64,000 nt of DNA, taken from assembly GCA_964057225.1 (NCBI GenBank), contig OZ059898.1, positions 15,996,001 to 16,060,000 of the forward strand, in the 5' to 3' direction. This DNA is from Auanema rhodensis. Its lineage: Eukaryota; Animalia; Nematoda. A program made the position numbers and the translations under genes. The notes under the pieces were generated by a model that did not search any database, was not told the DNA's origin, and was given only the letters and a program-made list of their open reading frames with translations. Shown here piece after piece: positions 1-61,211 of this stretch. Within the stretch, counting starts at the first letter, position 1. Every line of letters starts with the position of its first letter.

Positions 1-83
1 TAAAAGTGTTTCATAACTGCAAATCTGAGATGCTTCATGAACATAAAAGTTGGAACAGAGTAAAATGAAGTTGCATCGACTTG

Positions 84-93
84 TTTTTAAAAA
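84..93 (-). terminator. Pol III oligo-T terminator (T5) 3 nt after the tRNA 3' end, part of a palindromic TTTTTAAAAA; present in nearly every unit
   Basis: Plus-strand aaaaa at 89-93 is TTTTT on the tRNA strand; the plus strand has its own T5 at 84-88. Confidence 0.85.
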
Positions 94-96
94 TTT

Positions 97-168
97 TGAC
101 CACTGAGCGGATCGAACGCCCAACCTTTCGATCTGGAGTCGAACGCGCTACCATTGCGCCAAGCAGTC
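97..168 (-). tRNA. tRNA-Trp(CCA), representative of about 143 copies (each lies at +16..+87 from the start of a spurious MFLKILTT ORF)
   Basis: Minus strand reads GACTGCT TG GCGC AATGGTA GCGC G TTCGA CTCCAGA TCGAA AGGTT GGGCG TTCGATC CGCTC AGTGGTC A: full cloverleaf, A box TGGCGCAATGG, B box GTTCGATCC, anticodon CCA (plus-strand tgg at 134-136), no intron. Matches the C. elegans-type tRNA-Trp as I recall it. Confidence 0.98.
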
Positions 169-188
169 ATATTAGGGTTGCTTCCAAA

Positions 189-248
189 GTGTTTCATAAC
201 TGCAAATCTGAGATGCTTCATGAACATAAAAGTTGGAACAGAGTAAAA
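189..248. repeat. 60-bp spacer subrepeat (representative monomer), 1-10 copies per tRNA unit
   Basis: gtgtttcataactgcaaatctgagatgcttcatgaacataaaagttggaacagagtaaaa; unit lengths of 183, 243, 303, 363, 423, 483 and 723 bp are seen. Confidence 0.97.
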
Positions 249-1799
249 GTGTTTCATAACTGCAAATCTGAGATGCTTCATGAACATAAAAGTTGGAACA
301 GAGTAAAAGTGTTTCATAACTGCAAATCTGAGATGCTTCATGAACATAAAAGTTGGAACAGAGTAAAAGTGTTTCATAACTGCAAATCTGAGATGCTTCA
401 TGAACATACAAGTTGGAACAGAGTAAAAGTGTTTCATAACTGCAAATCTGAGATGCTTCATGAACATAAAAGTTGGAACAGAGTAGAATGAAGTTGCATC
501 GACTTGTTTTTAAAAATTTTGACCACTGAGCGGATCGAACGCCCAACCTTTCGATCTGGAGTCGAACGCGCTACCATTGCGCCAAGCAGTCATATTAGGG
601 TTGCTTCCAAAGTGTTTCATAACTGCAAATCTGAGATGCTTCATGAACTTACAAGTTGGAACAGAGTAAAAGTGTTTCATAACTGCAAATCTGAGATGCT
701 TCATGAACATAAAAGTTGGAACAGAGTAAAAGTGTTTCATAACTGCAAATCTGAGATGCTTCATGAACATAAAAGTTGGAACAGAGTAAAATGAAGTTGC
801 ATCGACTTGTTTTTAAAAATTTTGACCACTGAGCGGATCGAACGCCCAACCTTTCGATCTGGAGTCGAACGCGCTACCATTGCGCCAAGCAGTCATATTA
901 GGGTTGCTTCCAAAGTGTTTCATAACTGCAAATCTGAGATGCTTCATGAACATACAAGTTGGAACAGAGTAAAAGTGTTTCATAACTGCAAATCTGAGAT
1001 GCTTCATGAACATAAAAGTTGGAACAGAGTAAAATGAAGTTGCATCGACTTGTTTTTAAAAATTTTGACCACTGAGCGGATCGAACGCCCAACCTTTCGA
1101 TCTGGAGTCGAACGCGCTACCATTGCGCCAAGCAGTCATATTAGGGTTGCTTCCAAAGTGTTTCATAACTGCAAATCTGAGATGCTTCATGAACATAAAA
1201 GTTGGAACAGAGTAAAAGTGTTTCATAACTGCAAATCTGAGATGCTTCATGAACATAAAAGTTGGAACAGAGTAAAAGTGTTTCATAACTGCAAATCTGA
1301 GATGCTTCATGAACATAAAAGTTGGAACAGAGTAAAAGTGTTTCATAACTGCAAATCTGAGATGCTTCATGAACATACAAGTTGGAACAGAGTAAAAGTG
1401 TTTCATAACTGCAAATCTGAGATGCTTCATGAACATAAAAGTTGGAACAGAGTAGAATGAAGTTGCATCGACTTGTTTTTAAAAATTTTGACCACTGAGC
1501 GGATCGAACGCCCAACCTTTCGATCTGGAGTCGAACGCGCTACCATTGCGCCAAGCAGTCATATTAGGGTTGCTTCCAAAGTGTTTCATAACTGCAAATC
1601 TGAGATGCTTCATGAACTTACAAGTTGGAACAGAGTAAAAGTGTTTCATAACTGCAAATCTGAGATGCTTCATGAACATAAAAGTTGGAACAGAGTAAAA
1701 GTGTTTCATAACTGCAAATCTGAGATGCTTCATGAAAATAAAAGTTGGAACAGAGTAAAAGTGTTTCATAACTACAAATCTGAGATGCTTCATGAACAT

Positions 1800-2136
1800 C
1801 GTTCCATTCGGAAATCAATACGTAGCAGGCGGGTTAGAATCAGACGACATGAGGCTGAGAGAGGACGACACGCCCTTCATATGGAACACAGACTTCAGCT
1901 TTGCCTTATGGAATGACTATGGATGGTTGGTCTTCCTTTCTTAGCTCTCTTTCACTTTATATCTTTATGTAGACTTATATAACTTATTGTAATCATGTAG
2001 ACATAATAAACCTTTCTTTCTCGAGTCTTATGTTTATCCATTATGCTCTTTATCTACCGCTACATCTGGAATACTATCACACTCATCTTGTAGGCTTTAT
2101 TGGTCTATAGGATCGACGTGAGAGCATAACGGAACG
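1800..2136 (+). repeat. 5' LTR of element 1
   Basis: Direct repeat of 4754-5090; contains aataaa near 2005. Confidence 0.95.
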
Positions 2137-2149
2137 TGGAGGTTCCACC
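2137..2149 (+). promoter_or_regulatory. Primer-binding site complementary to the tRNA-Gln 3' end
   Basis: TGGAGGTTCCACC directly after the LTR is the reverse complement of GGTGGAACCT-CCA, the animal tRNA-Gln acceptor end. Confidence 0.85.
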
Positions 2150-3479
2150 TCGAACATTTTATCTTGATTTCTTGACTATTTTCTCTTATATTTCGTTATT
2201 TTCCATATTTCATTGAATCTGAATTCTCTTATATCTCTAAACCATCTACTCCATGTCTTAACACAATACGGTGGGGCCAACAACGTTTAAAAGGGAACAG
2301 ATGCAAGGACCACTCCTTTTGGAGATGGATTTTATATTTTTTGAAACTGAAGTTATATTTTCCCGTTTGTTCACAATTTTCTGTCTGTCTGAACCCAACA
2401 ATTTTTATATCCTTGCTGTTAACATCGAATACTCTGTTACCCGAACTCGAAGCATTTTTGAGGACCCTAGGATGAATTAGTGAACAAATTCACCCAAGGA
2501 TAATTTTTATTGAGATTTATGCCCACACTTTCTCCTTTTAAGGATTGATTTTGGCTTCGAGGAAAGAATAGCCACGGTTATTTCTTTATTTTTTGTGGAT
2601 GAAACAATTTTGCGCACCAAATTGAGATTATTTCATATTTTGCGATCAGGACTATTTTATTTTGAGTTACATTTCTGTTCAGACAACTTTTTGCCATTAA
2701 CATCCAAAAATATTTTGATAACGCATTGAATTTACACGGGAAACCTCACCTAAATGGGAGGAATATTATGAAAAGTGAATTTTAAGATCGCTATAGTCCG
2801 AAAAATCCTGTACAATTTTACGAACTGAATTATTATTAGTGATTGTCTATCAGGTCGTGTTGGCTTAAGCATATCAGTTTGGATTTTCTCCCCTTACTAT
2901 ATGTCACCTTCCTCATACCGTTATTGTTGTTTTGAAGCATAAGACTCATTCCTAAACACCATAATTCTTTAAATATAGTTATTGTAATCTTTAGTCATCT
3001 ATTCCTAGCCATAATTTTAAAACTAGATTTCTGATCATGATGGGACTACGGTACTCATTCGTTTTCCAAATTGCTTCCTTAAAAAGTAATGCTATTACGA
3101 ATGTACATTACAAAAACCGCTAAAATCCTTTGAACATTTACCAAAGTCCATTTTCGTGGCATTTTCGATCACTCGTGAGTCCAAGAAGATCAGAATCGTC
3201 AGAAAAAGAAAAAAAAATGGGAATAAGGACTAATGAGATTGCTCAGGCATCAATCAAGTGAGCACTGAACATTTTCGAACATATACAAACTGGTTGAATT
3301 ATATACATTTAAGAATATTAAATTGGAAAGCGAACAAAGTCCAAATTTTCATACGGTAGTAGGCGGATCTCTGTTAAAGGCCACAACTTAGATTCATTCC
3401 TTAACGCCGACTATACAAACCAGTTACTCACAGCTTTCTCACCTCTTTTCCAAAATTCCTTATCCATAACACTCATTAA

Positions 3480-4057
3480 CGTCTCAAAATCCCCCACGTT
3501 ACTAAACACTCAAGGTTTTTCCAAACCAAGAGCACTACCAAAGTGGATAAGCGATTCCGATCAGCTGTACCTCTCAGTACACGAACTGATTTTGATCTGC
3601 GAGACTCAGCTCCACTCACCAGAAGCCGAGCTCGCGCACAGAGCACCGCTATAATCAACGACGAGCAGAAAGCCGAGCACAAAACCGAAAAATTCTTTAC
3701 TCCTCGTGCAGGCACTTATTCACCTACTGAACGATTAAGCGACGAGGATTACGTACCACCAGGAGGAGAAGAAACATCCATCATAGTGGAAGAACAAACA
3801 CCAGTTACTGCTAAGAAGTCAACAACGTTGAAGGAAACATGGTACAACTCAAGAATCCATTTGGAAAAATTCAAGACGTACACAAAGACAATCTCAAACT
3901 TTTGCGATCAAATACAACGACTTATGAAACGGACGACGACAGCGATATTGAGATCATAAAAGTCATAAATGGTAACGATAACTATGACTCTACTGAAGAA
4001 ACAGAACCAGAAGACCCATCGGACCAAAATTGGCTACCACCAAGAAGAAGACGATGA
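3480..4057 (+). pseudogene. Accessory ORF or ORF remnant of element 1, unknown function (two overlapping frames, 3543-3959 and 3839-4057)
   Basis: Peptides IPHVTKHSRFFQTKSTTKVDKRF and KFFTPRAGTYSP are conserved with element 2. No in-frame ATG; acidic tail ending PPRRRR lies in the second frame. Confidence 0.55.
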
Positions 4058-4753
4058 AAGAAATAATTTCGAGATTGATAAAATTATTGTAAAACTTTGT
4101 ATCAACTCTCTTTTAAAAAACCAGAGCTATTAATATTATTATATCATTGAAAAACTTGAGTTAGACGAGATGTAAGCTAATAATCAAAAAGCATTTCAGT
4201 TTCAAAGCATATATGATTATAAAACTTCATCAATTTCAAATAATTTCCCGTAAATAAAGAAGAAATGAAAGATAAGAGACATTATATTGCATATTCATCT
4301 GAGCAACAGTCCTTATCAAGTAGTTGATGATTCAATTCCGGAAATTATATGGGATTTAATTTAATTTTTTTTTATTATTACAATTCGCTTTGAATACGCT
4401 GAAGAAACATGCTAGCTCCATCGATAATATAGCATGACTCTCGTTTCTCTATACTCAAACAAGTTAGACATGCAGCGTCGTGCCTAAAAAGCTATTTTGC
4501 GCACTCTCGCTGACAAAATATAGCCTTGGTATTCTAAAAGATTGTTTTATTACTTAATATTCATGTATTTTCAAATAATTTTTATTGAATTCTTTTCAGA
4601 TACTATTGTTTAACATTATATTGTAATTTATCTTTACTATTTTTATGTTAACATTGTAATTTTTATTTTTAAAACTAAACCTTCTGCTACGATTGAAACA
4701 AGCCACATATTTTGCTATTCGCGGGGACGCGACATAAACTCGAAAAAATGGCA

Positions 4754-5090
4754 CGTTCCATTCGGAAATCAATACGTAGCAGGCGGGTTAGAATCAGACG
4801 ACATGAGGCTGAGAGAGGACGACACGCCCTTCATATGGAACACAGACTTCAGCTTTGCCTTATGGAATGACTATGGATGGTTGGTCTTCCTTTCTTAGCT
4901 CTCTTTCACTTTATATCTTTATGTAGACTTATATAACTTATTGTAATCATGTAGACATAATAAACCTTTCTTTCTCGAGTCTTATGTTTATCCATTATGC
5001 TCTTTATCTACCGCTACATCTGGAATACTATCACACTCATCTTGTAGGCTTTATTGGTCTATAGGATCGACGTGAGAGCATAACGGAACG
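4754..5090 (+). repeat. 3' LTR of element 1
   Basis: Direct repeat of 1800-2136, preceded by the hairpin TCGCG-GGGA-CGCGA (4719-4732) and a short purine-rich tract. Confidence 0.95.
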
Positions 5091-8000
5091 ACATAAAAGT
5101 TGGAACAGAGTAAAATGAAGTTGCATCGACTTGTTTTTAAAAATTTTGACCACTGAGCGGATCGAACGCCCAACCTTTCGATCTGGAGTCGAACGCGCTA
5201 CCATTGCGCCAAGCAGTCATATTAGGGTTGCTTCCAAAGTGTTTCATAACTGCAAATCTGAGATGCTTCATGAACATACAAGTTGGAACAGAGTAAAAGT
5301 GTTTCATAACTGCAAATCTGAGATGCTTCATGAACATAAAAGTTGGAACAGAGTAAAATGAAGTTGCATCGACTTGTTTTTAAAAATTTTGACCACTGAG
5401 CGGATCGAACGCCCAACCTTTCGATCTGGAGTCGAACGCGCTACCATTGCGCCAAGCAGTCATATTAGGGTTGCTTCCAAAGTGTTTCATAACTGCAAAT
5501 CTGAGATGCTTCATGAACATAAAAGTTGGAACAGAGTAAAAGTGTTTCATAACTGCAAATCTGAGATGCTTCATGAACATAAAAGTTGGAACAGAGTAAA
5601 AGTGTTTCATAACTGCAAATCTGAGATGCTTCATGAACATAAAAGTTGGAACAGAGTAAAAGTGTTTCATAACTGCTAATCTGAGATGCTTCATGAACAT
5701 ACAAGTTGGAACAGAGTAAAAGTGTTTCATAACTGCAAATCTGAGATGCTTCATGAACATAAAAGTTGGAACAGAGTAAAATGAAGTTGCATCGACTTGT
5801 TTTTAAAAATTTTGACCACTGAGCGGATCGAACGCCCAACCTTTCGATCTGGAGTCGAACGCGCTACCATTGCGCCAAGCAGTCATATTAGGGTTGCTTC
5901 CAAAGTGTTTCATAACTGCAAATCTGAGATGCTTCATGAACTTACAAGTTGGAACAGAGTAAAAGTGTTTCATAACTGCAAATCTGAGATGCTTCATGAA
6001 CATAAAAGTTGGAACAGAGTAAAAGTGTTTCATAACTGCAAATCTGAGATGCTTCATGAAAATAAAAGTTGGAACAGAGTAAAAGTGTTTCATAACTACA
6101 AATCTGAGATGCTTCATGAACATAAAAGTTGGAACAGAGTAAAATGAAGTTGCATCGACTTGTTTTTAAAAATTTTGAACACTGAGCGGATCGAACGCCC
6201 AACCTTTCGATCTGGAGTCGAACGCGCTACCATTGCGCCAAGCAGTCATATTAGGGTTGCTTCCAAAGTGTTTCATAACTGCAAATCTGAGATGCTTCAT
6301 GAACATACAAGTTGGAACAGAGTAAAAGTGTTTCATAACTGCAAATCTGAGATGCTTCATGAACATAAAAGTTGGAACAGAGTAAAATGAAGTTGCATCG
6401 ACTTGTTTTTAAAAATTTTGACCACTGAGCGGATCGAACGCCCAACCTTTCGATCTGGAGTCGAACGCGCTACCATTGCGCCAAGCAGTCATATTAGGGT
6501 TGCTTCCAAAGTGTTTCATAACTGCAAATCTGAGATGCTTCATGAACTTACAAGTTGGAACAGAGTAAAAGTGTTTCATAACTGCAAATCTGAGATGCTT
6601 CATGAACATAAAAGTTGGAACAGAGTAAAAGTGTTTCATAACTGCAAATCTGAGATGCTTCATGAAAATAAAAGTTGGAACAGAGTAAAAGTGTTTCATA
6701 ACTACAAATCTGAGATGCTTCATGAACATAAAAGTTGGAACAGAGTAATAGTGTTTCATAACTGCAAATCTGAGATGCTTCATGAACATAAAAGTTGGAA
6801 CAGAGTAAAATGAAGTTGCATCGACTTGTTTTTAAAAATTTTGACCACTGAGCGGATCGAACGCCCAACCTTTCGATCTGAAGTCGAACGCGCTACCATT
6901 GCGCCAAGCAGTCATATTAGGGTTGCTTCCAAAGTGTTTCATAACTGCAAATCTGAGATGCTTCATGAACATACAAGTTGGAACAGAGTAAAAGTGTTTC
7001 ATAACTGCAAATCTGAGATGCTTCATGAACATAAAAGTTGGAACAGAGTAAAATGAAGTTGCATCGACTTGTTTTTAAAAATTTTGACCACTGAGCGGAT
7101 CGAACGCCCAACCTTTCGATCTGGAGTCGAACGCGCTACCATTGCGCCAAGCAGTCATATTAGGGTTGCTTCCAAAGTGTTTCATAACTGCAAATCTGAG
7201 ATGCTTCATGAACATAAAAGTTGGAACAGAGTAAAAGTGTTTCATAACTGCAAATCTGAGATGCTTCATGAAAATAAAAGTTGGAACAGAGTAAAAGTGT
7301 TTCATAACTACAAATCTGAGATGCTTCATGAACATAAAAGTTGGAACAGAGTAAAAGTGTTTCATAACTGCAAATCTGAGATGCTTCATGAACATAAAAG
7401 TTGGAACAGAGTAAAATGAAGTTGCATCGACTTGTTTTTAAAAATTTTGACCACTGAGCGGATCGAACGCCCAACCTTTCGATCTGGAGTCGAACGCGCT
7501 ACCATTGCGCCAAGCAGTCATATTAGGGTTGCTTCCAAAGTGTTTCATAACTGCAAATCTGAGATGCTTCATGAACATACAAGTTGGAACAGAGTAAAAG
7601 TGTTTCATAACTGCAAATCTGAGATGCTTCATGAACATAAAAGTTGGAACAGAGTAAAATGAAGTTGCATCGACTTGTTTTTAAAAATTTTGACCACTGA
7701 GCGGATCGAACGCCCAACCTTTCGATCTGGAGTCGAACGCGCTACCATTGCGCCAAGCAGTCATATTAGGGTTGCTTCCAAAGTGTTTCATAACTGCAAA
7801 TCTGAGATGCTTCATGAACATAAAAGTTGGAACAGAGTAAAATGAAGTTGCATCGACTTGTTTTTAAAAATTTTGACCACTGAGCGGATCGAACGCCCAA
7901 CCTTTCGATCTGGAGTCGAACGCGCTACCATTGCGCCAAGCAGTCATATTAGGGTTGCTTCCAAAGTGTTTCATAACTGCAAATCTGAGATGCTTCATGA

Positions 8001-17000: not shown

Positions 17001-18258
17001 AAATCTGAGATGCTTCATGAACATACAAGTTGGAACACAGTAAAAGTGTTTCATAACTGCAAATCTGAGATGCTTCATGAACATAAAATTTGGAACAGAG
17101 TAAAATGAAGTTGCATCGACTTGTTTTTAAAAATTTTGACCACTGAGCGGATCGAACGCCCAACCTTTCGATCTGGAGTCGAACGCGCTACCATTGCGCC
17201 AAGCAGTCATATTAGGGTTGCTTCCAAAGTGTTTCATAACTGCAAATCTGATATGCTTCATGAACATAAAAGTTGGAACAGAGTAAAAGTGTTTCATAAC
17301 TGCAAATCTGAGATGCTTCATGAACATAAAAGTTCGAACAGAGTGAAATGAAGTTGCATCGACTTGTTTTTAAAAATTTTGACCACTGAGCGGATCGAAC
17401 GCCCAACCTTTCGATCTGGAGTCGAACGCGCTACCATTGCGCCAAGCAGTCATATTAGGGTTGCTTCCAAAGTGTTTCATAACTGCAAATCTGTGATGCT
17501 TCATGAACATAAAAGATAGAACAGAGTAAAATGAAGTTGAATCGACTTGTTTTTAAAAATTTTGACCACTGAGCGGATCGAACGCCCAACCTTTCGATCT
17601 GGAGTCGAACGCGCTACCATTGCGCCAAACAGTCATATTAGGGTCGCTTCCAAAGTGTTTCATAACTGCAAATCTGAGATGCTTCATAAACATACAAGTT
17701 GGAACATAGTAAAAGTGTTTCATAACTGCAAATCTGAGATGCTTCATGAACATACAAGTTGGAACAGAGTAAAAGTGTTTCATAACTGTAAATCTGAGAT
17801 GCTTCATGAACATAAAAGATAGAACAGAGTAAAATGAAGTTGCATCGACTTGTTTTTAAAAATTTTGACCACTGAGCGGATCGAACGCCCAACCTTTCGA
17901 TCTGGAGTCGAACGCGCTACCATTGCGCCAAGCAGTCATATTAGGGTTGCTTCCAAAGTGTTTCATAACTGCAAATCTGATATGCTTCATGAATATACAA
18001 GTTGGAACAGAGTAAAAGTGTTTCATAACTGCAAATCTGAGATGCTTCATGAACATAAAAGATAGAACAGAGTAAAATGAAGTTGCATTGACTTGTTTTT
18101 AAAAATTTTGACCACTGAGCGGATCGAACGCCCAACCTTTCGATCTGGAGTCGAACGCGCTACCATTGCGCCAAGCAGTCATATTAGGGTTGCTTCCAAA
18201 GTGTTTCATAGCTGCAAATCTGAGATGCTTCATGAACATAAAAGTTCGAACAGAGTGA
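5091..18258 (-). repeat. tRNA-Trp tandem array, segment B (about 49 tRNA copies)
   Basis: Same 123+60n units; first tRNA 5147-5218, last 18109-18180; 1032-bp higher-order repeat at about 9550-12650. Confidence 0.97.
6842..6913 (-). tRNA. tRNA-Trp variant with UCA anticodon (candidate opal suppressor), otherwise intact
   Basis: Plus strand has atctgaagtc instead of atctggagtc (tga at 6879-6881); the rest of the cloverleaf, A/B boxes and terminator equal the consensus. Confidence 0.85.
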
Positions 18259-18781
18259 CGTTCCATTCGGACTCCCCATAAATGTAGCTGAAGGGTTAGA
18301 GCCGGACGACCAGAGGACCGAGGAATGGCTCCGCATCAAACATAAAATGGAGATACACGAACCATTAAAATTATATCAAGATTTAGCCTATAAGCCAAAA
18401 CTCCTTCTCCATCGTACTCAACGATGGATTCGTATAATTTCCACAGGACTTAAGTCATGCCAGTGGGATTATAACGTTGGAAATCCATTTTTTTCTTTCT
18501 ATCTTTTCTTTTCTTTTGTTTCTAACCTTAAAATAAATGTCCAAAGGCCGCAAAAGTACAAAGGGGACGACATGAATAAAGTTTTTTTTAAAGATTCTAG
18601 AGCAGTAAGAAAACAAAATTAGAGGAAAGTGCAAGAGCGGATAAAAATAGTTTTTGCGAAGAGATAAACATCATTAACTATAATAAGCTTACGGTAGATA
18701 GGCGGAGTCAGATTCCTGGCCAGGATTTGAAAAACTCCCTCTCATTTACCCTCCGCATCGCCCAGCAAAGCATGACTATCC

Positions 18782-19826: not shown

Positions 19827-20171
19827 CGTTCCATTCGGACTCCCCATAAATGTAGCTGAAGGGTTAGAGCCGGACGACCAGAGGACCGAGGAATGGCTCC
19901 GCCTTCCCTCGTTCCCTTGGTCGGGAGTTCGCCTCTTAGCAAGCTCATGGACGGCTTGTAGTTTAGTCTTTATACTTATATTTATCTTATTGTATTGTAT
20001 CTTTATCTTTGTATATTATTGTTGTAGTTTCATGCCAATAAATCTTTCTCTCTTTTATCTTATGATTGACCTTATGCTCTTTATTCCTTACCGCTACACC
20101 AAGGAATACTATGCGCGTCATAGTATAAACTATGATGGTTTATATTATCGACGCAGGAGCATAACGGAACG
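19827..20171 (+). repeat. 3' LTR of element 2
   Basis: First 76 bp repeat 18259-18334; shares start, end and internal blocks (ttatgctctttat, taccgctaca, gaatactat) with the element 1 LTR; preceded by hairpin TCGCG-CGGA-CGCGA at 19794-19807. Confidence 0.9.
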
Positions 20172-50400: not shown

Positions 50401-53400
50401 AACTCAAATCTGAGATGCTTCATGAACATAAAATTTGGAACAGAGTAAAATGAAGTTGCATCGACTTGTTTTTAAAAATTTTGACCACTGAGCGGATCGA
50501 ACGCCCAACCTTTCGATCTGGAGTCGAACGCGCTACCATTGCGCCAAGCAGTCATATTAGGGTCGATTCCAAAGTGTTTCATAACTGCAAATCTGAGATG
50601 CTTCATAAACATACAAGTTGGAACAGAGTAAAAGTGTTTCATAACTGCAAATCTGAGATGCTTCATGAACATAAAAGATAGAACAGAGTAAAATGAAGTT
50701 GCATCGACTTGTTTTTAAAAATTTTGACCACTGAGCGGATCGAACGCCCAACCTTTCGATCTGGAGTCGAACGCGCTACCATTGCGCCAAGCAGTCATAT
50801 TAGGGTCGCTTCCAAAGTGTTTCATAACTGCAAATCTGAGATGCTTCATAAACATTCAAGTTGGAACAGAGTAAAAGTGTTTCATAACTGCAAATCTGAG
50901 ATGCTTCATGAACATACAAGTTCGAACACAGTAAAAGTGTTTCATAACTGCAAATCTGAGATGCTTCATGAACATACAAGTTGGAACACAGTAAAAGTGT
51001 TTCATAACTGCGAATCTGTGATGCTTCATGAACATAAAAGATAGAACAGAGTAAAATGAAGTTGCATCGACTTGTTTTTAAAAATTTTGACCACTGAGCG
51101 GATCGAACGCCCAACCTTTCGATCTGGAGTCGAACGCGCTACCATTGCGCCAAGCAGTCATATTAGGGTTGCTTCCAAAGTGTTTCATAGCTGCAAATCT
51201 GAGATGCTTCATGAACATAAAAGTTCGAACAGAGTGAAATGAAGTTGCATCGACTTGTTTTTAAAAATTTTGACCACTGAGCGGATCGAACGCCCAACCT
51301 TTCGATCTGGAGTCGAACGCGCTACCATTGCGCCAAGCAGTCATATTAGGGTTGCTTCCAAAGTGTTTCATAACTGCAAATCTGAGATGCTTCATGAACA
51401 TACAAGTTGGAACAGAGTAGAAGTGTTTCATAACTGCAAATCTGAGATGCTTCATAAACATACAAGTTGGAACAGAGTGAAAGTGTTTCATAACTGCAAA
51501 TCTGTGATACTCCATGAACATAAAAGATAGAACAGAGTAAAATGAAGTTGCATCGACTTGTTTTTAAAAATTTTGACCACTGAGCGGATCGAACGCCCAA
51601 CCTTTCGATCTGGAGTCGAACGCGCTACCATTGCGCCAAGCAGTCATATTAGGGTCGCTTCCAAAGTGTTTCATAACTGCAAATCTGAGATGCTTCATAA
51701 ACATACAAGTTGGAACAGAGTAAAAGTGTTTCATAACTGCAAATCTGAGATGCTTCATGAACATACAAGTTGGAACACAGTAAAAGTGTTTCATAACTGC
51801 AAATCTGAGATGCTTCATGAACATAAAATTTGGAACAGAGTAAAATGAAGTTGCATCGACTTGTTTTTAAAAATTTTGACCACTGAGCGGATCGAACGCC
51901 CAACGTTTCGATCTGGAGTCGAACGCGCTACCATTGCGCCAAGCAGTCATATTAGGGTCGATTCCAAAGTGTTTCATAACTGCAAATCTGAGATGCTTCA
52001 TAAACATACAAGTTGGAACAGAGTGAAAGTGTTTCATAACTGCAAATCTGTGATGCTTCATGAACATAAAAGATAGAACAGAGTAAAATGAAGTTGCATC
52101 GACTTGTTTTTAAAAATTTTGACCACTGAGCGGATCGAACGCCCAACCTTTCGATCTGGAGTCGAACGCGCTACCATTGCGCCAAGCAGTCATATTAGGG
52201 TCGCTTCCAAAGTGTTTCATAACTGCAAATCTGAGATGCTTCATAAAGATTCAAGTTGGAACAGAGTAAAAGTGTTTCATAACTGCAAATCTGAGATGCT
52301 TCATGGACAAAAGTTGGAATAGAGTAAAATGAAGTTGCATCGACTTGTTTTTAAAAATTTTGACCACTGAGCGGATCGTACGCCCAACCTTTCGATCTGG
52401 AGTCGAACGCGCTACCATTGCGCCAAGCAGTCACATTGGAGTTGTTTCCAAAGTGTGTCATAACTGCAAATCTGAGATGCATCATGAACATGAAAGATGG
52501 ATCAGAGTAAAAGTGTTTCATAACTGCAAATCTGTGATGCTTCATAAACAAACGTTGGAATAGAGTAAAATGAAGTTGCATCGACTTGTTTTTAAAAATT
52601 TTGACCACTAAGCGGATCGAACGCCCAATCTTTCGATCTGGAGTCGAACGCGCTACCATTGCGCCAAGCAGTCATATTAGGGTCGCTTCCAAAGTGTTTC
52701 ATAACTGCAAATCTGAGATGCTTCATAAACATACAAGTTGGAACAGAGTAAAAGTGTTTCATAACTGCAAATCTGAGATGCTTCATAAACATACAAGTTG
52801 GAACAGAGTGAAAGTGTTTCATAACTGCAAATCTGTGATACTCCATGAACATAAAAGATAGAACTGAGTAAAATGAAGTTGCATCGACTTGTTTTTAAAA
52901 ATTTTGACCACTGAGCGGATCGAACGCCCAACCTTTCGATCTGGAGTCGAACGCGCTACCATTGCGCCAAGCAGTCATGCTAGGGTTGCTTCCAAAGTGT
53001 TTCATAACTGCAAATCTGAGATGCTTCATGAACATACAAGTTGGAACAGAGTAGAAGTGTTTCATAACTGCAAATCTGAGATGCTTCATGAACATAAAAG
53101 ATAGAACAGAGTAAAATGAAGTTGCATCGACTTGTTTTTAAAAATTTTGACCACTGAGCGGATCGAACGCCCAACCTTTCGATCTGGAGTCGAACGCGCT
53201 ACCATTGCGCCAAGCAGTCACATTGGAGTTGTTTCCAAAGTGTGTCATAACTGCAAATCTGAGATGCATCATGAACATGAAAGATGGATCAGAGTAAAAG
53301 TGTTTCATAACTGCAAATCTGTGATGCTTCATAGACATACAAGTTGGAACAGAGTAAAAGTGTTTCATAGCTGCAAATCTGAGATGCTTCATGAACATAA

Positions 53401-54901
53401 AAGTTGGAATAGAGTAAAATGAAGTTGCATCGACTTGTTTTTAAAAATTTTGACCACTGAGCGGATCGAACGCCCAACCTTTCGATCTGGAGTCGAACGC
53501 GCTACCATTGCGCCAAGCAGTCACATTGGAGTTGTTTCCAAAGTGTGTCATAACTGCAAATCTGAGATGCATCATGAACATGAAAGATGGATCAGAGTAA
53601 AAGTGTTTCATAACTGCAAATCTGTGATGCTTCATAAACAAACGTTGGAATAGAGTAAAATGAATTTGCATCGACTTGTTTTTAAACATTTTGACCACTA
53701 AGCGGATCGAACGCCCAATCTTTCGATCTGGAGTCGAACGCGCTACCATTGCGCCAAGCAGTCATATTAGGGTCGCTTCCAAAGTGTTTCATAACTGCAA
53801 ATCTGAGATGCTTCATAAACATACAAGTTGGAACAGAGTAAAAGTGTTTCATAACTGCAAATCTGAGATGCTTCATGAACATGAAAGATGGAACAGAGTA
53901 AAATGAAGTTTCGTCGATTTGTTTTTAAAAATTTTGACCACTAAGCGGATCGAACGCCCAACCTTTCGATCTGGAGTCGAACACGCTACCATCGCGCCAA
54001 GCAGTCATATTAGGGTCGCTTCCAAAGTGTTTCATAACTGCAAATCTGAGATGCTTCATAAACATACAAGTTGGAACAGAGTAAAAGTGTTTCATAACTG
54101 CAAATCTGAGATGCTTCATGAACATAAAAGGTAGAACAGAGTAAAATGAAGTTGCATCGACTTGTTTTTAAAAATTTTGACCACTGAGCGGATCGAACGC
54201 CCAACCTTTCGATCTGGAGTCGAACGCGCTACCATTGCGCCAAGCAGTCATATTAGGGTTGCTTCCAAAGTGTTTCATAACTGCAAATCTGAGATGCTTC
54301 ATAAACATACAAGTTGGAACAGAGTAAAAGTGTTTCATAACTGCAAATCTGAGATGCTTCATAGACATACAAGTTGGAACAGAGTAAAAGTGTTTCATAG
54401 CTGCAAATCTGAGATGCTTCATGAACATAAAAGTTGGAACAGAGTAAAAGTGTTTCATAACTGCAAATCTGAGATGCTTCATGAACATAATAGATAGAAG
54501 AGAGTAAAATGAAGTTGCATCGACTTGTTTTTAAAAATTTTGAACACTGAGCGGATCGAACGCCCAACCTTTCGATCTGGAGTCGAACGCGCTACCATTG
54601 CGCCAAACAGTAATTTTAGGGTTGCTTCGAAAGTGTTTCATAACTGCAAATCTGAGATGCATCATGAACATGAAAGATGGAACAGAGTAAAAGTGTTTCA
54701 TAACTGCAAATCTGTGATGCTTCATAGACATACAAGTTGGAACAGAGTAAAAGTGTTTCATAGCTGCAAATCTGAGATGCTTCATGAACATAAAAGTTGG
54801 AACAGAGTAAAAGTGTTTCATAACTGCAAATCTGTGATGCTTCATGAACAAAAGTTGGAATATAGTAAAATGAAGTTGCATCGACTTGTTTTTAAAAATT
54901 T

Positions 54902-54974
54902 TGACCACTGAGCGGATCGAACGCCCAACCTTTCGATCTGAAGTCGAACGCGCTACCATTGCCCCTAAGCAGTC
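54902..54974 (-). pseudogene. tRNA-Trp-derived copy with UCA anticodon and damaged A box/D stem
   Basis: atctgaagtc anticodon change plus gcgccaagc to gcccctaagc (substitution and 1-nt insertion). Confidence 0.8.
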
Positions 54975-57076
54975 ATATTAGGGTTGCTTCGAAAGTGTTT
55001 CATAGCTGCAAATCTGAGATGCATCATGAACATGAAAGATGGAACAGAGTAAAAGTGTTTCATAACTGCAAATCTGTGATGCTTCATGAACAAAAGTTGG
55101 AATATAGTAAAATGAAGTTGCATCGACTTGTTTTTAAAAATTTTGAACACTGAGCGGATCGAACGCCCAACCTTTCGATCTGGAGTCGAACGCGCTACCA
55201 TTGCGCCAAACAGTAATTTTAGGGTTGCTTCGAAAGTGTTTCATAGCTGCAAATCTGAGATGCTTCATGAACATAAAAGTTGGAACAGAGTAAAAGTGTT
55301 TCATAACTGCAAATCTGAGATGCTTCATGAACATAAAAGTTGGAACAGAGTAAAAGTGTTTCATAACTGCAAATCTGAGATGCTTCATGAACATAAAAGT
55401 TGGAACAGAGTAAAAGTGTTTCATAACTGCAAATCTGAGATGCTTCATGAACATAAAAGTTGGAACAGAGTAAAAGTGTTTCATAACTGCAAATCTGAGA
55501 TGCTTCATGAACATAAAAGTTGGAACAGAGTAAAAGTGTTTCATAACTGCAAATCTGTGATGCTTCATGAACATAAAAGTTGGAACAGAGTAAAAGTGTT
55601 TCATAACTGCAAATCTGTGATGCTTCATGAACATAAAAGTTGGAACAGAGTAAAAGTGTTTCATAACTGCAAATCTGTGATGCTTCATGAACATAAAAGT
55701 TGAAACAGAGTAAAAGTTTTTCATTACTGCAAATCTGAGATGCTTCATGAAAATAAAAGTTGGAACAGAGTAAAAGTGTTTCATAACTGCAAATCTGAGA
55801 TGCTTGATGAACATAAAAATTGGAGCAGAGTAATATGAAGTTGCATCGACTTGTTTTTAAAAATTTTGACCACTGAGCGGATCGAACGCCCAACCTTTCG
55901 ATCTGGAGTCGAACGCGCTACCATTGCGCCAAGCAGTCATATTAGGGTTGCTTCCAAAGTGTTTCATAACTGCAAATCTGAGATGCTTCATAAACATAAA
56001 AGTTGGAACAGAGTAAAATGAAGTTGCATCGACTTGTTTTCAAAAATTTTGACCACTGAGCGGATCGAACGCCCAACCTTTCGATCTGGAGTCGAACGCG
56101 CTACCATTGCGCCAAGCAGTCATATTAGGGTTGCTTCCAAAGTGTTTCATAACTGCAAATCTGAGATGCTTCATGAACATAAAAGTGGGAACAGAGTAAA
56201 AGTGTTTCATAACTGCAAATCTGAGATGCTTGATGAACATAAAAGTTAGAACAGAGTAAAAGTGTTTCATAACTGCAAATCTGAGATGCTTGATGAACAT
56301 AAAAGTTAGAACAGAGTAAAATGAAGTTGCATCGACTTGTTTTTAAAAATTTTGACCACTGAGCGGATCGAACGCCCAACCTTTCGATCTGGAGTCGAAC
56401 GCGCTACCATTGCGCCAAGCAGTCATATTAGGGTTGCTTCCAAAGTGTTTCATAACTGCAAATCTGAGATGCTTCATAAACATACAAGTTGGAACAGAGT
56501 AAAAGTGTTTCATAACTGCAAATCTGAGATGCTTCATAGACATACAAGTTGGAACAGAGTAAAAGTGTTTCATAGCTGCAAATCTGAGATGCTTCATGAA
56601 CATAAAAGTTGGAACAGAGTAAAAGTGTTTCATAACTGCATATCTGAGATGCTTCATGAACATAATAGATAGAAGAGAGTAAAATGAAGTTGCATCGACT
56701 TGTTTTTAAAAATTTTGAACACTGAGCGGATCGAACGCCCAACCTTTCGATCTGGAGTCGAACGCGCTACCATTGCGCCAAACAGTAATTTTAGGGTTGC
56801 TTCGAAAGTGTTTCATAACTGCAAATCTGAGATGCATCATGAACATGAAAGATGGAACAGAGTAAAAGTGTTTCATAACTGCAAATCTGTGATGCTTCAT
56901 AGACATACAAGTTGGAACAGAGTAAAAGTGTTTCATAGCTGCAAATCTGAGATGCTTCATGAACATAAAAGTTGGAACAGAGTAAAAGTGTTTCATAACT
57001 GCAAATCTGTGATGCTTCATGAACAAAAGTTGGAATATAGTAAAATGAAGTTGCATCGACTTGTTTTTAAAAATTT

Positions 57077-57149
57077 TGACCACTGAGCGGATCGAACGCC
57101 CAACCTTTCGATCTGAAGTCGAACGCGCTACCATTGCCCCTAAGCAGTC
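57077..57149 (-). pseudogene. tRNA-Trp-derived copy with UCA anticodon and damaged A box/D stem (second 2175-bp repeat)
   Basis: Same two lesions as 54902-54974. Confidence 0.8.
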
Positions 57150-59251
57150 ATATTAGGGTTGCTTCGAAAGTGTTTCATAGCTGCAAATCTGAGATGCATC
57201 ATGAACATGAAAGATGGAACAGAGTAAAAGTGTTTCATAACTGCAAATCTGTGATGCTTCATGAACAAAAGTTGGAATATAGTAAAATGAAGTTGCATCG
57301 ACTTGTTTTTAAAAATTTTGAACACTGAGCGGATCGAACGCCCAACCTTTCGATCTGGAGTCGAACGCGCTACCATTGCGCCAAACAGTAATTTTAGGGT
57401 TGCTTCGAAAGTGTTTCATAGCTGCAAATCTGAGATGCTTCATGAACATAAAAGTTGGAACAGAGTAAAAGTGTTTCATAACTGCAAATCTGAGATGCTT
57501 CATGAACATAAAAGTTGGAACAGAGTAAAAGTGTTTCATAACTGCAAATCTGAGATGCTTCATGAACATAAAAGTTGGAACAGAGTAAAAGTGTTTCATA
57601 ACTGCAAATCTGAGATGCTTCATGAACATAAAAGTTGGAACAGAGTAAAAGTGTTTCATAACTGCAAATCTGAGATGCTTCATGAACATAAAAGTTGGAA
57701 CAGAGTAAAAGTGTTTCATAACTGCAAATCTGTGATGCTTCATGAACATAAAAGTTGGAACAGAGTAAAAGTGTTTCATAACTGCAAATCTGTGATGCTT
57801 CATGAACATAAAAGTTGGAACAGAGTAAAAGTGTTTCATAACTGCAAATCTGTGATGCTTCATGAACATAAAAGTTGAAACAGAGTAAAAGTTTTTCATT
57901 ACTGCAAATCTGAGATGCTTCATGAAAATAAAAGTTGGAACAGAGTAAAAGTGTTTCATAACTGCAAATCTGAGATGCTTGATGAACATAAAAATTGGAG
58001 CAGAGTAATATGAAGTTGCATCGACTTGTTTTTAAAAATTTTGACCACTGAGCGGATCGAACGCCCAACCTTTCGATCTGGAGTCGAACGCGCTACCATT
58101 GCGCCAAGCAGTCATATTAGGGTTGCTTCCAAAGTGTTTCATAACTGCAAATCTGAGATGCTTCATAAACATAAAAGTTGGAACAGAGTAAAATGAAGTT
58201 GCATCGACTTGTTTTCAAAAATTTTGACCACTGAGCGGATCGAACGCCCAACCTTTCGATCTGGAGTCGAACGCGCTACCATTGCGCCAAGCAGTCATAT
58301 TAGGGTTGCTTCCAAAGTGTTTCATAACTGCAAATCTGAGATGCTTCATGAACATAAAAGTGGGAACAGAGTAAAAGTGTTTCATAACTGCAAATCTGAG
58401 ATGCTTGATGAACATAAAAGTTAGAACAGAGTAAAAGTGTTTCATAACTGCAAATCTGAGATGCTTGATGAACATAAAAGTTAGAACAGAGTAAAATGAA
58501 GTTGCATCGACTTGTTTTTAAAAATTTTGACCACTGAGCGGATCGAACGCCCAACCTTTCGATCTGGAGTCGAACGCGCTACCATTGCGCCAAGCAGTCA
58601 TATTAGGGTTGCTTCCAAAGTGTTTCATAACTGCAAATCTGAGATGCTTCATAAACATACAAGTTGGAACAGAGTAAAAGTGTTTCATAACTGCAAATCT
58701 GAGATGCTTCATAGACATACAAGTTGGAACAGAGTAAAAGTGTTTCATAGCTGCAAATCTGAGATGCTTCATGAACATAAAAGTTGGAACAGAGTAAAAG
58801 TGTTTCATAACTGCATATCTGAGATGCTTCATGAACATAATAGATAGAAGAGAGTAAAATGAAGTTGCATCGACTTGTTTTTAAAAATTTTGAACACTGA
58901 GCGGATCGAACGCCCAACCTTTCGATCTGGAGTCGAACGCGCTACCATTGCGCCAAACAGTAATTTTAGGGTTGCTTCGAAAGTGTTTCATAACTGCAAA
59001 TCTGAGATGCATCATGAACATGAAAGATGGAACAGAGTAAAAGTGTTTCATAACTGCAAATCTGTGATGCTTCATAGACATACAAGTTGGAACAGAGTAA
59101 AAGTGTTTCATAGCTGCAAATCTGAGATGCTTCATGAACATAAAAGTTGGAACAGAGTAAAAGTGTTTCATAACTGCAAATCTGTGATGCTTCATGAACA
59201 AAAGTTGGAATATAGTAAAATGAAGTTGCATCGACTTGTTTTTAAAAATTT

Positions 59252-59324
59252 TGACCACTGAGCGGATCGAACGCCCAACCTTTCGATCTGAAGTCGAACG
59301 CGCTACCATTGCCCCTAAGCAGTC
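59252..59324 (-). pseudogene. tRNA-Trp-derived copy with UCA anticodon and damaged A box/D stem (third 2175-bp repeat)
   Basis: Same two lesions as 54902-54974. Confidence 0.8.
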
Positions 59325-60762
59325 ATATTAGGGTTGCTTCGAAAGTGTTTCATAGCTGCAAATCTGAGATGCATCATGAACATGAAAGATGGAACAGAGT
59401 AAAAGTGTTTCATAACTGCAAATCTGTGATGCTTCATGAACAAAAGTTGGAATATAGTAAAATGAAGTTGCATCGACTTGTTTTTAAAAATTTTGAACAC
59501 TGAGCGGATCGAACGCCCAACCTTTCGATCTGGAGTCGAACGCGCTACCATTGCGCCAAACAGTAATTTTAGGGTTGCTTCGAAAGTGTTTCATAGCTGC
59601 AAATCTGAGATGCTTCATGAACATAAAAGTTGGAACAGAGTAAAAGTGTTTCATAACTGCAAATCTGAGATGCTTCATGAACATAAAAGTTGGAACAGAG
59701 TAAAAGTGTTTCATAACTGCAAATCTGAGATGCTTCATGAACATAAAAGTTGGAACAGAGTAAAAGTGTTTCATAACTGCAAATCTGAGATGCTTCATGA
59801 ACATAAAAGTTGGAACAGAGTAAAAGTGTTTCATAACTGCAAATCTGAGATGCTTCATGAACATAAAAGTTGGAACAGAGTAAAAGTGTTTCATAACTGC
59901 AAATCTGTGATGCTTCATGAACATAAAAGTTGGAACAGAGTAAAAGTGTTTCATAACTGCAAATCTGTGATGCTTCATGAACATAAAAGTTGGAACAGAG
60001 TAAAAGTGTTTCATAACTGCAAATCTGTGATGCTTCATGAACATAAAAGTTGAAACAGAGTAAAAGTTTTTCATTACTGCAAATCTGAGATGCTTCATGA
60101 AAATAAAAGTTGGAACAGAGTAAAAGTGTTTCATAACTGCAAATCTGAGATGCTTGATGAACATAAAAATTGGAGCAGAGTAATATGAAGTTGCATCGAC
60201 TTGTTTTTAAAAATTTTGACCACTGAGCGGATCGAACGCCCAACCTTTCGATCTGGAGTCGAACGCGCTACCATTGCGCCAAGCAGTCATATTAGGGTTG
60301 CTTCCAAAGTGTTTCATAACTGCAAATCTGAGATGCTTCATAAACATAAAAGTTGGAACAGAGTAAAATGAAGTTGCATCGACTTGTTTTCAAAAATTTT
60401 GACCACTGAGCGGATCGAACGCCCAACCTTTCGATCTGGAGTCGAACGCGCTACCATTGCGCCAAGCAGTCATATTAGGGTTGCTTCCAAAGTGTTTCAT
60501 AACTGCAAATCTGAGATGCTTCATGAACATAAAAGTGGGAACAGAGTAAAAGTGTTTCATAACTGCAAATCTGAGATGCTTGATGAACATAAAAGTTAGA
60601 ACAGAGTAAAAGTGTTTCATAACTGCAAATCTGAGATGCTTGATGAACATAAAAGTTAGAACAGAGTAAAAGTGTTTCATAACTGCAAATCTGAGATGCT
60701 TGATGAACATAAAAGTTAGAACAGAGTAAAATGAAGTTGCATCGACTTGTTTTTAAAAATTT

Positions 60763-60834
60763 TGACCACTGAGCGGATCGAACGCCCAACCTTTCGATCT
60801 GGAGTCGAACGCGCTACCATTGCGCCAAGCAGTC
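60763..60834 (-). tRNA. Terminal tRNA-Trp(CCA) of the array
   Basis: Consensus cloverleaf; its 5' flank is a strongly diverged version of the spacer. Confidence 0.93.
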
Positions 60835-61211
60835 TTTAGGAATATTTCCAAAGTGTTTGATAACAGCAAAAATCAGATGGTTTATCAACAACACAAAAAA
60901 TGAAGTTAAATAAAATGAAGTTGTATCGATTTATTCTTCAAAATTCTGAGCTTATATTTTTTTGTAAATAATTTTGATGTTTGTTTCTTTCCTTCATTTT
61001 TTTTACTTTTCTTGCTTACTTGATGTCTTATCAAAGGTTGATATCTAACTGGCACTATAATCTATTCGAGAGTCTTATTTAAATACGGATCATCGTTGAG
61101 CAGACATTATTAATTGTTTCTTCTTTGTCAACGCTTTAATTTTTTTAATTTTCTGTACACAGGATTTACAGGAGTTTTACATAATATTATCATTATTCAC
61201 TCAGGTTTCAA

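What the first reader, a model, noticed from the sequence alone, without database searches (positions are those of the whole stretch)
1..60950. Satellite-like array of about 143 near-identical tRNA-Trp genes with variable-number 60-bp spacers
Seen: one tRNA species, one orientation, units of 123+60n bp (n=1-10), most copies with intact A/B boxes and terminator, and the array continues left of the window. Known: Trp is among the rarest amino acids and animals usually have few, dispersed tRNA-Trp genes; tRNA genes interleaved with short tandem repeats are best known from Entamoeba. Inference: copy number far exceeds translational need, so this may be a structural or germline locus (heterochromatin or pairing domain, Pol III/condensin hub, tRNA-fragment source) rather than simple gene dosage. 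This is the best candidate for an undescribed system here.
Basis: partly seen in the sequence, partly recalled or inferred. Interest (0 to 1): 0.88.

Follow-up and report, generated by a model that had tools for sequence, protein, structure and literature searches.

The report
Nematode tandem array of tRNA-Trp genes
The window holds a real head-to-tail array of 143 tryptophan-tRNA genes separated by variable numbers of a 60-bp repeat, probably from a nematode; the human hookworm Necator americanus has a similar array, so it is a striking but recognisable tandem tRNA-gene array.

Summary
There are 143 tRNA-Trp(CCA) genes, all on the minus strand, and 108 are identical. Units are 123+60n bp (n = 1-6 and 10). 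142 copies keep a T4-5 terminator and 132 keep the consensus A/B boxes. The array runs off the left edge and ends at 60,834, followed by a decayed spacer relic.

Three LTR retroelements with target-site duplications interrupt it. It also shows higher-order repeats and regional sub-variants, so it evolves like a satellite.

The tRNA differs by 1 nt from tRNA-Trp copies in a Necator americanus chromosome. That locus carries at least 95 tandem copies in 173-bp units with an unrelated spacer. In Necator the tRNA is about 18 times less variable than its spacer (0/72 vs 19/101 variable sites). In the window the contrast is weaker but in the same direction.

My best reading is an amplified family of Pol III tRNA-Trp genes in a clade V nematode. 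It is kept uniform by unequal crossing-over and gene conversion, with constraint on the tRNA. It resembles the tandem tRNA clusters of Entamoeba and Arabidopsis.

My literature searches found no description of nematode tRNA-Trp arrays. I class it as a new member of a known kind, of moderate interest.

The parts
1..1799 (-). Array segment A: 5 tRNA-Trp units. The array continues beyond the left edge of the window.
97..168 (-). Example tRNA-Trp(CCA) gene, 72 nt, the majority sequence. It has G1-C72 and A73, box A region TGGCGCAATGG and box B region GTTCGATCC.
   Evidence: Rfam 60.6 bits; majority sequence; boxes
63..96 (-). 3' trailer (34 nt) of the example gene. The T5 Pol III terminator lies at +4 to +8 after the tRNA 3' end (plus-strand 89-93).
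   Evidence: pi 0.0092
169..185 (-). 5' leader (17 nt) of the example gene.
   Evidence: pi 0.046
186..485 (.). Example spacer: five copies of the 60-bp minisatellite. Positions 1-36 of the 60-mer are nearly invariant; positions 37-60 carry the sub-variants.
1800..5090 (+). Insertion (a): non-autonomous LTR element with ends CGTTCC...GGAACG and 4-bp target-site duplication ACAT (1796-1799 and 5091-5094), inserted in a 60-mer.
5091..18258 (-). Array segment B (49 tRNA genes). It includes a 1032-bp four-unit higher-order repeat at 9415-12876 and the anticodon-UCA copy at 6842-6913.
18259..20171 (+). Insertion (b): related LTR element with a truncated left LTR and 4-bp duplication GTGA (18255-18258 and 20172-20175).
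20172..25200 (-). Array segment C (20 tRNA genes).
25201..41451 (-). Insertion (c): BEL/Pao retrovirus-like element in tandem (LTR-internal-LTR-internal-LTR, period 7906 bp). The LTRs are at 25201-25639, 33107-33545 and 41013-41451. One 2405-aa gag-pol-env ORF is present twice (25623-32840 and 33529-40746). It is inserted 2-5 bp upstream of the tRNA at 25124-25195.
41452..60834 (-). Array segment D (69 tRNA genes). It includes a 2175-bp higher-order repeat x3 at 54024-60671 that carries the degenerate tRNA copies.
60835..60950 (-). Array edge: diverged relic of leader, one 60-mer and trailer, with no tRNA beyond it.
   Evidence: alignment z = 15 against shuffles

Best explanation
This is a tandemly amplified family of RNA polymerase III genes for cytoplasmic tRNA-Trp(CCA) in a nematode genome, probably clade V and close to the strongylids. 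Each unit is a complete gene: internal A and B boxes, a T5 terminator 4 nt past the 3' end, and a spacer made of 1-10 copies of a 60-bp minisatellite. The array grows, shrinks and stays uniform by unequal crossing-over and gene conversion at two nested levels: the 60-mer, and blocks of several units. It therefore behaves physically like a satellite, with higher-order repeats, regional sub-variants, a decayed edge and transposon insertions, while the tRNA sequence itself is held constant. I infer that it works as a high-copy supply of tRNA-Trp genes, analogous to 5S rDNA arrays (comparison from general knowledge). Possibly only part of it is transcribed, or only in particular tissues, as in the Arabidopsis tRNA clusters. 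Shown: the anatomy, the intact promoter and terminator elements, the homogenisation pattern, the related Necator array, and the lower variability of the tRNA. Inferred: transcription, the dosage role, and the selective reason for choosing Trp.
For: There are 143 copies above the Rfam gathering score, and 108 are identical. Terminators are present in 142 of 143 copies and consensus boxes in 132 of 143. G1-C72, A73 and the CCA anticodon fit a eukaryotic tRNA-Trp (identity rules from established knowledge). Higher-order repeats of 1032 bp and 2175 bp at 99.7-99.8% identity, together with regional spacer variants, show local unequal exchange. Three insertions with target-site duplications, and an empty-site paralogue at about 45.8 kb, show a real locus that has existed for some time. 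Necator americanus chromosome CM062681.1 carries 92 tRNA-Trp genes in 20 kb and 3 more in the 7 kb beyond it. The unit is 173 bp, the tRNA is 71/72 identical to the window's, and the spacer is unrelated (z = 1.3). In Necator, pi is 0.004 for the tRNA against 0.072 for the spacer, with 0/72 against 19/101 variable sites, p = 2.4e-5. In the window, pi is 0.009 for the tRNA against 0.040-0.051 for position-matched 60-mers and 0.046 for the leader. Non-singleton variable sites are 8/72 against 45/171, p = 0.01.
Against: No expression, Pol III occupancy or chromatin data exist here. In the window the tRNA is no less variable than its 34-nt trailer (pi 0.009 for both), and the contrast with leader plus trailer alone is not significant (p = 0.43). 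Positions 1-25 of the 60-mer are also almost invariant, so low diversity is not unique to the tRNA. Copies are not independent, so the p-values are rough. Selection on one copy among more than 100 should be very weak, so biased gene conversion or recent amplification could mimic constraint. No translational reason for so many Trp genes is evident. Similarity of the tRNA between species is expected anyway if each array arose separately from a conserved dispersed gene.
Confidence: 0.62

Rival explanations
1. It is a neutral or selfish satellite seeded by a tRNA-Trp gene. A single gene with its 183-bp surroundings was amplified by unequal exchange. Most copies are silenced in heterochromatin and contribute nothing, and their uniformity reflects recent amplification and homogenisation rather than selection.
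For: The locus shows satellite hallmarks: higher-order repeats, regional variants, a decayed edge, TE accumulation, and minimal units of 183 bp here and 173 bp in Necator. Singleton variants are as dense in the tRNA (about 8e-4 per site-copy) as in the 60-mers (about 7e-4), computed from the counts. Degenerate and anticodon-mutant copies persist. Arabidopsis tRNA clusters are transcriptionally silent in most tissues (PMC7544208).
Against: In Necator, 0/72 tRNA sites vary against 19/101 spacer sites at equal copy number. Common variants are depleted in the tRNA in the window. Terminators and boxes are kept in nearly all copies. The same isoacceptor is amplified in two species with unrelated spacers.
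Confidence: 0.25
2. The array is mainly a structural or germline chromatin element: a TFIIIC/condensin hub, an insulator, a pairing or heterochromatin domain, a germline-restricted sequence, or a dedicated source of tRNA fragments. It is not a supply of tRNA for translation.
For: Copy number is at least 143, against 12 dispersed genes in C. elegans. Arrays exist in two species. tRNA genes can act as boundary elements in other organisms, for example the human 1q23.3 tRNA repeat proposed as a boundary element (PMC4041453).
Against: Nothing in the sequence calls for it. B boxes alone would suffice for TFIIIC binding, yet whole tRNAs and their terminators are kept. No other motif is supported: the GTTTC piRNA-promoter core in the 60-mer lacks a properly placed YRNT and is expected by chance in about 11% of such units (my estimate; motif from PMC6436959).
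Confidence: 0.08
3. It is an assembly artefact: a short tRNA-Trp cluster over-expanded by a long-read assembler.
For: Some blocks are exact or nearly exact duplicates: 2175-bp copies 1 and 2 are identical, and the two 7906-bp retroelement copies differ at 1 base.
Against: Unit lengths and spacer variants are highly heterogeneous along the array. Three different insertions have clean target-site duplications. There is a decayed edge. An independent assembly of another species has the same kind of array. The exact copy number remains unverified.
Confidence: 0.03

Closest known systems
Necator americanus tRNA-Trp array (GCA_031761385.1, CM062681.1, about 34.388-34.411 Mb)
   Same: It is a homogeneous head-to-tail tRNA-Trp(CCA) array. 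The tRNA is 71/72 identical, with a T4 terminator a few nt downstream, at least 95 copies, a decaying edge, and the tRNA far less variable than the spacer.
   Different: The unit is a fixed ~173 bp with no internal 60-bp minisatellite. The spacer sequence is unrelated (z = 1.3). GC is 50% against about 39%. The array switches orientation at L023 about 11.8-12.0 kb. It is annotated only as hypothetical proteins, and I found no paper describing it.
Entamoeba tRNA gene arrays (PMC2652664)
   Same: Tandem array units carry tRNA genes with short tandem repeats filling the intergenic spacers, and the repeat number varies (abstract).
   Different: Entamoeba has 25 different array units with up to 5 tRNA genes each, some with 5S RNA, holding almost all tRNA genes and over 10% of the genome, and the repeats resemble microsatellites. 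Here there is one isoacceptor per unit and a 60-bp minisatellite. Whether other tRNAs are arrayed in this genome is unknown.
Arabidopsis clustered tRNA genes (Ser/Tyr cluster on chromosome 1; Cys cluster) (PMC2886086, PMC7544208, PMC12308677, PMC10701932)
   Same: These are extra tandem copies of ordinary tRNA genes with conserved Pol III elements, alongside dispersed copies. They expanded by tandem duplication. They are silent in most tissues but the Ser/Tyr cluster is switched on in specific cells, which is a model for a conditional dosage reserve.
   Different: This is a plant system whose silencing depends on DNA methylation. Copy numbers are lower (81 genes in 27 units; 4 Cys genes). There is no nested minisatellite spacer. 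Expression and chromatin state are unknown for the nematode array.
Daphnia magna Met-Trp-Gly array (L025)
   Same: It is a tandem tRNA array in an invertebrate that includes tRNA-Trp, and it is mis-annotated as a long hypothetical protein.
   Different: Its unit is heterogeneous at ~1.3 kb, with three tRNA genes in mixed orientation, and its Trp sequence differs.
C. elegans tRNA-Trp genes (sup-5, sup-7 and others; PMC4999229)
   Same: It is the same isoacceptor. Caenorhabditis loci translate to the same peptide across the tRNA.
   Different: C. elegans has twelve dispersed genes, seven of them inside introns, with no array.

Membership tests
Eukaryotic cytoplasmic tRNA-Trp gene (Pol III type 2 promoter) | Cloverleaf tRNA scoring above the Rfam RF00005 gathering threshold | tested here: met
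   143 hits at 44.7-62.2 bits against a cutoff of 29
Eukaryotic cytoplasmic tRNA-Trp gene (Pol III type 2 promoter) | Anticodon CCA | tested here: met
   139 of 143 copies; 4 copies have TCA
Eukaryotic cytoplasmic tRNA-Trp gene (Pol III type 2 promoter) | Internal A and B boxes, and a run of at least 4 T shortly downstream | tested here: met
   132 of 143 copies have the majority box sequences, and 142 of 143 have T4-5 at +4. The consensus box definitions come from established knowledge.
Eukaryotic cytoplasmic tRNA-Trp gene (Pol III type 2 promoter) | Eukaryote-type identity elements (G1-C72, discriminator A73) | tested here: met
   Read directly from the sequence. The rule comes from established knowledge of TrpRS recognition.
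Eukaryotic cytoplasmic tRNA-Trp gene (Pol III type 2 promoter) | Transcribed, processed and aminoacylated | not testable with these tools
   No RNA or ChIP data available
Tandem tRNA gene arrays of eukaryotes (Entamoeba / Arabidopsis type) | Head-to-tail repeat units, each containing tRNA gene(s) | tested here: met
Tandem tRNA gene arrays of eukaryotes (Entamoeba / Arabidopsis type) | Short tandem repeats of variable number in the spacers (Entamoeba feature) | tested here: met
   1-10 copies of a 60-bp repeat, which is longer than the microsatellite-like repeats of Entamoeba
Tandem tRNA gene arrays of eukaryotes (Entamoeba / Arabidopsis type) | Most tRNA genes of the genome arrayed, with several tRNA species per unit (Entamoeba feature) | tested here: inconclusive
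   The unit holds a single tRNA species, so that half is not met. The rest of the genome is not available.
Tandem tRNA gene arrays of eukaryotes (Entamoeba / Arabidopsis type) | Repressive chromatin and silencing of the clustered copies (Arabidopsis feature) | not testable with these tools
   No chromatin or expression data
Satellite DNA | Long tandem array with higher-order repeats, local homogenisation, diverged edges and TE insertions | tested here: met
Satellite DNA | No gene function; all positions evolve alike | tested here: inconclusive
   The tRNA is less variable than the spacers (p = 0.01 in the window, 2.4e-5 in Necator), but not less variable than its own trailer in the window.
tRNA-derived SINE | Dispersed copies with a tRNA-unrelated body, a 3' tail and target-site duplications | tested here: not met
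   The copies are strictly tandem full tRNA genes with terminators, with no tail and no per-copy duplications.

The most novel reading that the evidence does not exclude
Large tRNA-Trp-only arrays may be a conserved trait of strongylid-related nematodes, retained for something other than bulk translation. Possibilities are a Pol III/TFIIIC-bound chromosomal domain, or a dedicated source of tRNA-Trp-derived small RNAs. The tRNA would then be kept intact because the whole transcription unit is needed for that role.
Probability: 0.1. Interest if true: 0.75.

Novelty: new member of a known kind. Interest (0 to 1): 0.42.

Why it matters
Why eukaryotes keep many redundant tRNA genes is an open question. 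A single-isoacceptor array of more than 100 copies, for one of the rarest amino acids and present in at least two nematodes, is a clean natural case for testing dosage against silencing against chromatin roles. Nematode genetics and tRNA sequencing could be brought to bear on it. In practice, such arrays are currently annotated as hypothetical proteins (Necator RB195_003641, Daphnia OUZ56_010207), and they inflate tRNA counts and repeat statistics. They could also serve as high-copy species-specific markers, because the spacers differ completely between species.

Tried and rejected
1. Species identification failed.
- Exact look-ups of the retroelement polyprotein and of two array ORFs found nothing.
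- The 60-mer has no match in metagenome contigs, and the tRNA has no match in the bacterial and archaeal genome collection.
- The tRNA core matches 22 metagenome contigs, but those tRNAs differ by at least 7 of 72 nt and are single-copy genes of other eukaryotes.
- The retroelement is only about 40% identical to its best relatives, in Ancylostoma, Haemonchus and Necator. The host is therefore 'a clade V nematode, species unknown'.

2. Synteny with Necator: peptides from the right flank give no significant hit on the Necator array flank. This is inconclusive.

3. Targeting of tRNA genes by the BEL/Pao element: its insertion 2-5 bp upstream of a tRNA looked like Ty3-style targeting. However, it is a single event, with roughly 4% chance inside this array by my estimate, and a Necator relative (L027) has no tRNA nearby. 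Not supported.

4. piRNA promoter (Ruby motif) in the 60-mer: a GTTTC core is present, but there is no YRNT at my remembered spacing of ~40 nt downstream (the paper read gave no distance), and a 5-mer is expected by chance in about 11% of such units. Rejected as evidence.

5. Similarity between the window spacer and the Necator spacer: none (z = 1.3).

6. The minimum-free-energy fold of the unmodified tRNA is not a cloverleaf. This is common for tRNAs and I did not use it; the covariance-model score is the relevant test.

7. Other nematode arrays: the sense-frame peptide search of 1.84 billion representatives found only Necator with two nematode-type copies in one ORF. The antisense ORF search found only single-copy hits.

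8. Literature: seven searches found no description of nematode tRNA-Trp arrays.
Full report
OBSERVATION

ARAGORN finds 137 tRNA genes in the window, all on the minus strand. All are tRNA-Trp(CCA) except four that it labels SeC because the anticodon reads TCA. BLAST with one copy finds 143 full-length copies, all on the minus strand. Rfam's tRNA model gives 143 hits at or above the gathering score, at 44.7-62.2 bits against a cutoff of 29. 108 copies are identical.

Start-to-start spacings are 183, 243, 303, 363, 423, 483 and 723 bp, with a few variants 1-2 bp shorter. This is 123+60n with n = 1-6 and 10. The constant 123 bp is the 72-nt tRNA, a 34-nt 3' trailer and a 17-nt 5' leader. The rest is a 60-bp minisatellite.

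In 142 of 143 copies a T4-T5 run starts 4 nt after the tRNA 3' end. In 132 of 143 copies both box regions equal the majority sequence. The window begins inside a spacer, so the array continues to the left.

WHAT ELSE LIES IN THE INTERVAL

About 21.5 kb of the interval 1-60950 is not array. It consists of three insertions.
- Insertion (a), 1800-5090, is a non-autonomous LTR element with a 4-bp target-site duplication, ACAT.
- Insertion (b), 18259-20171, is a related element with a 4-bp duplication, GTGA.
- Insertion (c), 25201-41451, is a BEL/Pao retrovirus-like element present as LTR-internal-LTR-internal-LTR with a period of 7906 bp.

Details of insertion (c):
- Its three 439-bp LTRs are identical, and the two internal copies differ at one base.
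- Its single 2405-aa ORF carries DUF1759 (gag-like), Pao peptidase, reverse transcriptase, integrase, DUF5641 and a Phlebovirus G2-type envelope domain.
- Its closest relatives, at about 40% identity, are in Ancylostoma ceylanicum, Haemonchus contortus and Necator americanus.
- It sits 2-5 bp upstream of the tRNA at 25124-25195, with duplication TCAT or TCATATT.
- A near-identical uninterrupted paralogue of the insertion site lies at about 45.8 kb.

ARRAY DYNAMICS

The number of 60-mers per unit varies along the array, and recurring strings betray multi-unit duplications. A 1032-bp four-unit block is repeated at 9415-12876 (99.7% identity). A 2175-bp block is repeated three times at 54024-60671 (99.8% identity). 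The latter block carries the degenerate tRNA copies: six with three acceptor-stem changes, and three with a 1-nt insertion plus a TCA anticodon.

The left 16 kb is very uniform. The middle carries other leader and 60-mer variants. After the last tRNA (60763-60834) comes a diverged, tRNA-less copy of trailer, one 60-mer and leader. Its alignment scores z = 15 against shuffles. This suggests an ancestral unit with a single 60-mer (183 bp). All of this is the behaviour of a satellite evolving by unequal exchange with local homogenisation.

RELATED SEQUENCES

Gene callers sometimes translate such arrays, so I searched with a spurious ORF that runs through the tRNA. This found Necator americanus RB195_003641. 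Its locus is on chromosome CM062681.1 of GCA_031761385.1.
- It holds 92 tRNA-Trp genes in 20 kb, in ~173-bp units, with an orientation switch near the middle.
- 72 of 83 near-full copies are identical, and they differ from the window's tRNA at one base: C4 instead of U4.
- The spacer shows no similarity to the window's spacer (z = 1.3).
- One edge of the Necator array decays over about 7 kb, with three further copies. The other edge lies beyond the fetched DNA.

Loci in Caenorhabditis tropicalis and C. auriculariae encode the same or nearly the same tRNA peptide, but once only. An exhaustive peptide search of 1.84 billion representative proteins found no other nematode-type array. It did find multi-copy hits in Daphnia magna, a pipefish, a dandelion and a spider. 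The Daphnia locus is a 1.3-kb Met-Trp-Gly tandem unit.

The window's host is therefore very probably a clade V nematode. The species could not be identified.

IS THE tRNA CONSTRAINED?

In Necator, the tRNA has pi 0.004 and the spacer 0.072. Among 27 equal-length units, 0 of 72 tRNA sites vary against 19 of 101 spacer sites, p = 2.4e-5.

In the window the values of pi are as follows:

| Compartment | pi |
|---|---|
| tRNA | 0.0091 |
| 3' trailer | 0.0092 |
| 5' leader | 0.046 |
| Position-matched 60-mers | 0.040-0.051 |

Non-singleton variable sites are 8/72 in the tRNA against 45/171 in all once-per-unit non-tRNA sequence (p = 0.01). Against leader plus trailer alone the contrast is not significant (p = 0.43).

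Two further points limit this result. Singleton variants are about equally dense in the tRNA and the 60-mers. The first 25-36 positions of the 60-mer are also nearly invariant. Copies are not independent, so these p-values are approximate.

Taken together, the data favour maintained tRNA genes over a freely drifting satellite. The support is strong in Necator and moderate in the window.

MECHANISM

I commit to the following reading, at about 0.6 confidence. This is an amplified Pol III gene family for tRNA-Trp. It is homogenised by unequal crossing-over and gene conversion. The tRNA is held constant because array output, or at least array-level function, matters.

The nearest functional analogy is the Arabidopsis tandem tRNA clusters. 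They keep intact Pol III elements and are silent in most tissues (PMC7544208). Yet the Ser/Tyr cluster is switched on in particular root-cap cells, where its deletion altered the accumulation and stability of a glycoprotein rich in Ser, Tyr and Pro (PMC12308677). Whether the nematode array is expressed constitutively, conditionally or not at all is not shown. Why Trp is the amplified species is unexplained.

COMPARISON WITH KNOWN SYSTEMS

Tandem tRNA arrays are established in several eukaryotes:
- Entamoeba, with repeat-filled spacers (PMC2652664).
- Arabidopsis (PMC2886086, PMC10701932).
- Human 1q23.3 (PMC4041453).
- Several other eukaryotes surveyed in PMC2888827.

C. elegans, by contrast, has twelve dispersed tRNA-Trp genes (PMC4999229). 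The present case differs in three ways: it is a very large single-isoacceptor array, it is in nematodes, and it has a nested 60-bp variable-number spacer. It is also shared in kind with Necator.

Seven literature searches found no description of it. That is absence from the held library, not proof that it has never been described.

I rate it a new member of a known kind, with interest 0.42.

Noticed in passing
window 25201-41451 (ORFs 25623-32840 and 33529-40746, minus strand): A BEL/Pao retrovirus-like element that looks intact and very young. It has one 2405-aa gag-pol-env ORF with a phlebovirus G2-type envelope domain and three identical 439-bp LTRs, and it is present as a tandem dimer sharing the middle LTR. 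It is inserted 2-5 bp upstream of a tRNA 5' end, a position reminiscent of Ty3. A Necator relative has no tRNA next to it.
   Followed up: partly
window 1800-5090 and 18259-20171: Two related non-autonomous LTR elements with unusual termini (CGTTCC...GGAACG rather than TG...CA) and 4-bp target-site duplications. The second has a truncated left LTR. Their ORF (3543-3959) has no Pfam family.
   Followed up: partly
window 6842-6913; 54902-54974; 57077-57149; 59252-59324 (minus strand): Four copies have the anticodon changed from CCA to UCA, which would read the UGA stop codon. The copy at 6842 is otherwise perfect and has the highest Rfam score in the window (62.2 bits). The other three also carry a 1-nt insertion and a D-stem change.
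   Followed up: partly
window 186-245 and every 60-bp spacer unit (plus strand): The first ~36 bases of the 60-mer are almost invariant, while the last 24 carry nearly all the variation. The conserved half contains GTGTTTCA, which resembles the GTTTC core of nematode piRNA and snRNA promoters, but no YRNT lies at my remembered spacing of ~40 nt downstream (the paper read gave no distance). Probably chance.
   Followed up: partly
window 61340-61390 and 62807-62989 (plus strand): The AT-rich right flank (28% GC) contains cysteine-rich EGF-like exons, with a weak teneurin/laminin EGF match (E = 2e-4, below the Pfam threshold). A protein-coding gene therefore abuts the array.
   Followed up: partly
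L023 about 11800-12000 (Necator americanus CM062681.1): The Necator array switches from plus- to minus-strand tRNA genes at a junction that cuts through a tRNA copy. The two arms converge, and the minus arm is older and more decayed.
   Followed up: partly
L023 10001-10315 (Necator RB195_003641); L025 8001-19902 (Daphnia magna OUZ56_010207): Public annotations call 'hypothetical proteins' across tandem tRNA arrays, including a 1163-aa model in Daphnia over a Met-Trp-Gly 1.3-kb repeat. These gene models are spurious, but they give a handy way to find tRNA arrays through protein databases.
   Followed up: yes
window 767-1799 versus 5091-6123: The array blocks immediately left and right of insertion (a) are 99.8% identical to each other (offset 4324 bp). 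A simple insertion does not explain this. It probably reflects a multi-unit repeat pattern or an exchange event around the element.
   Followed up: no
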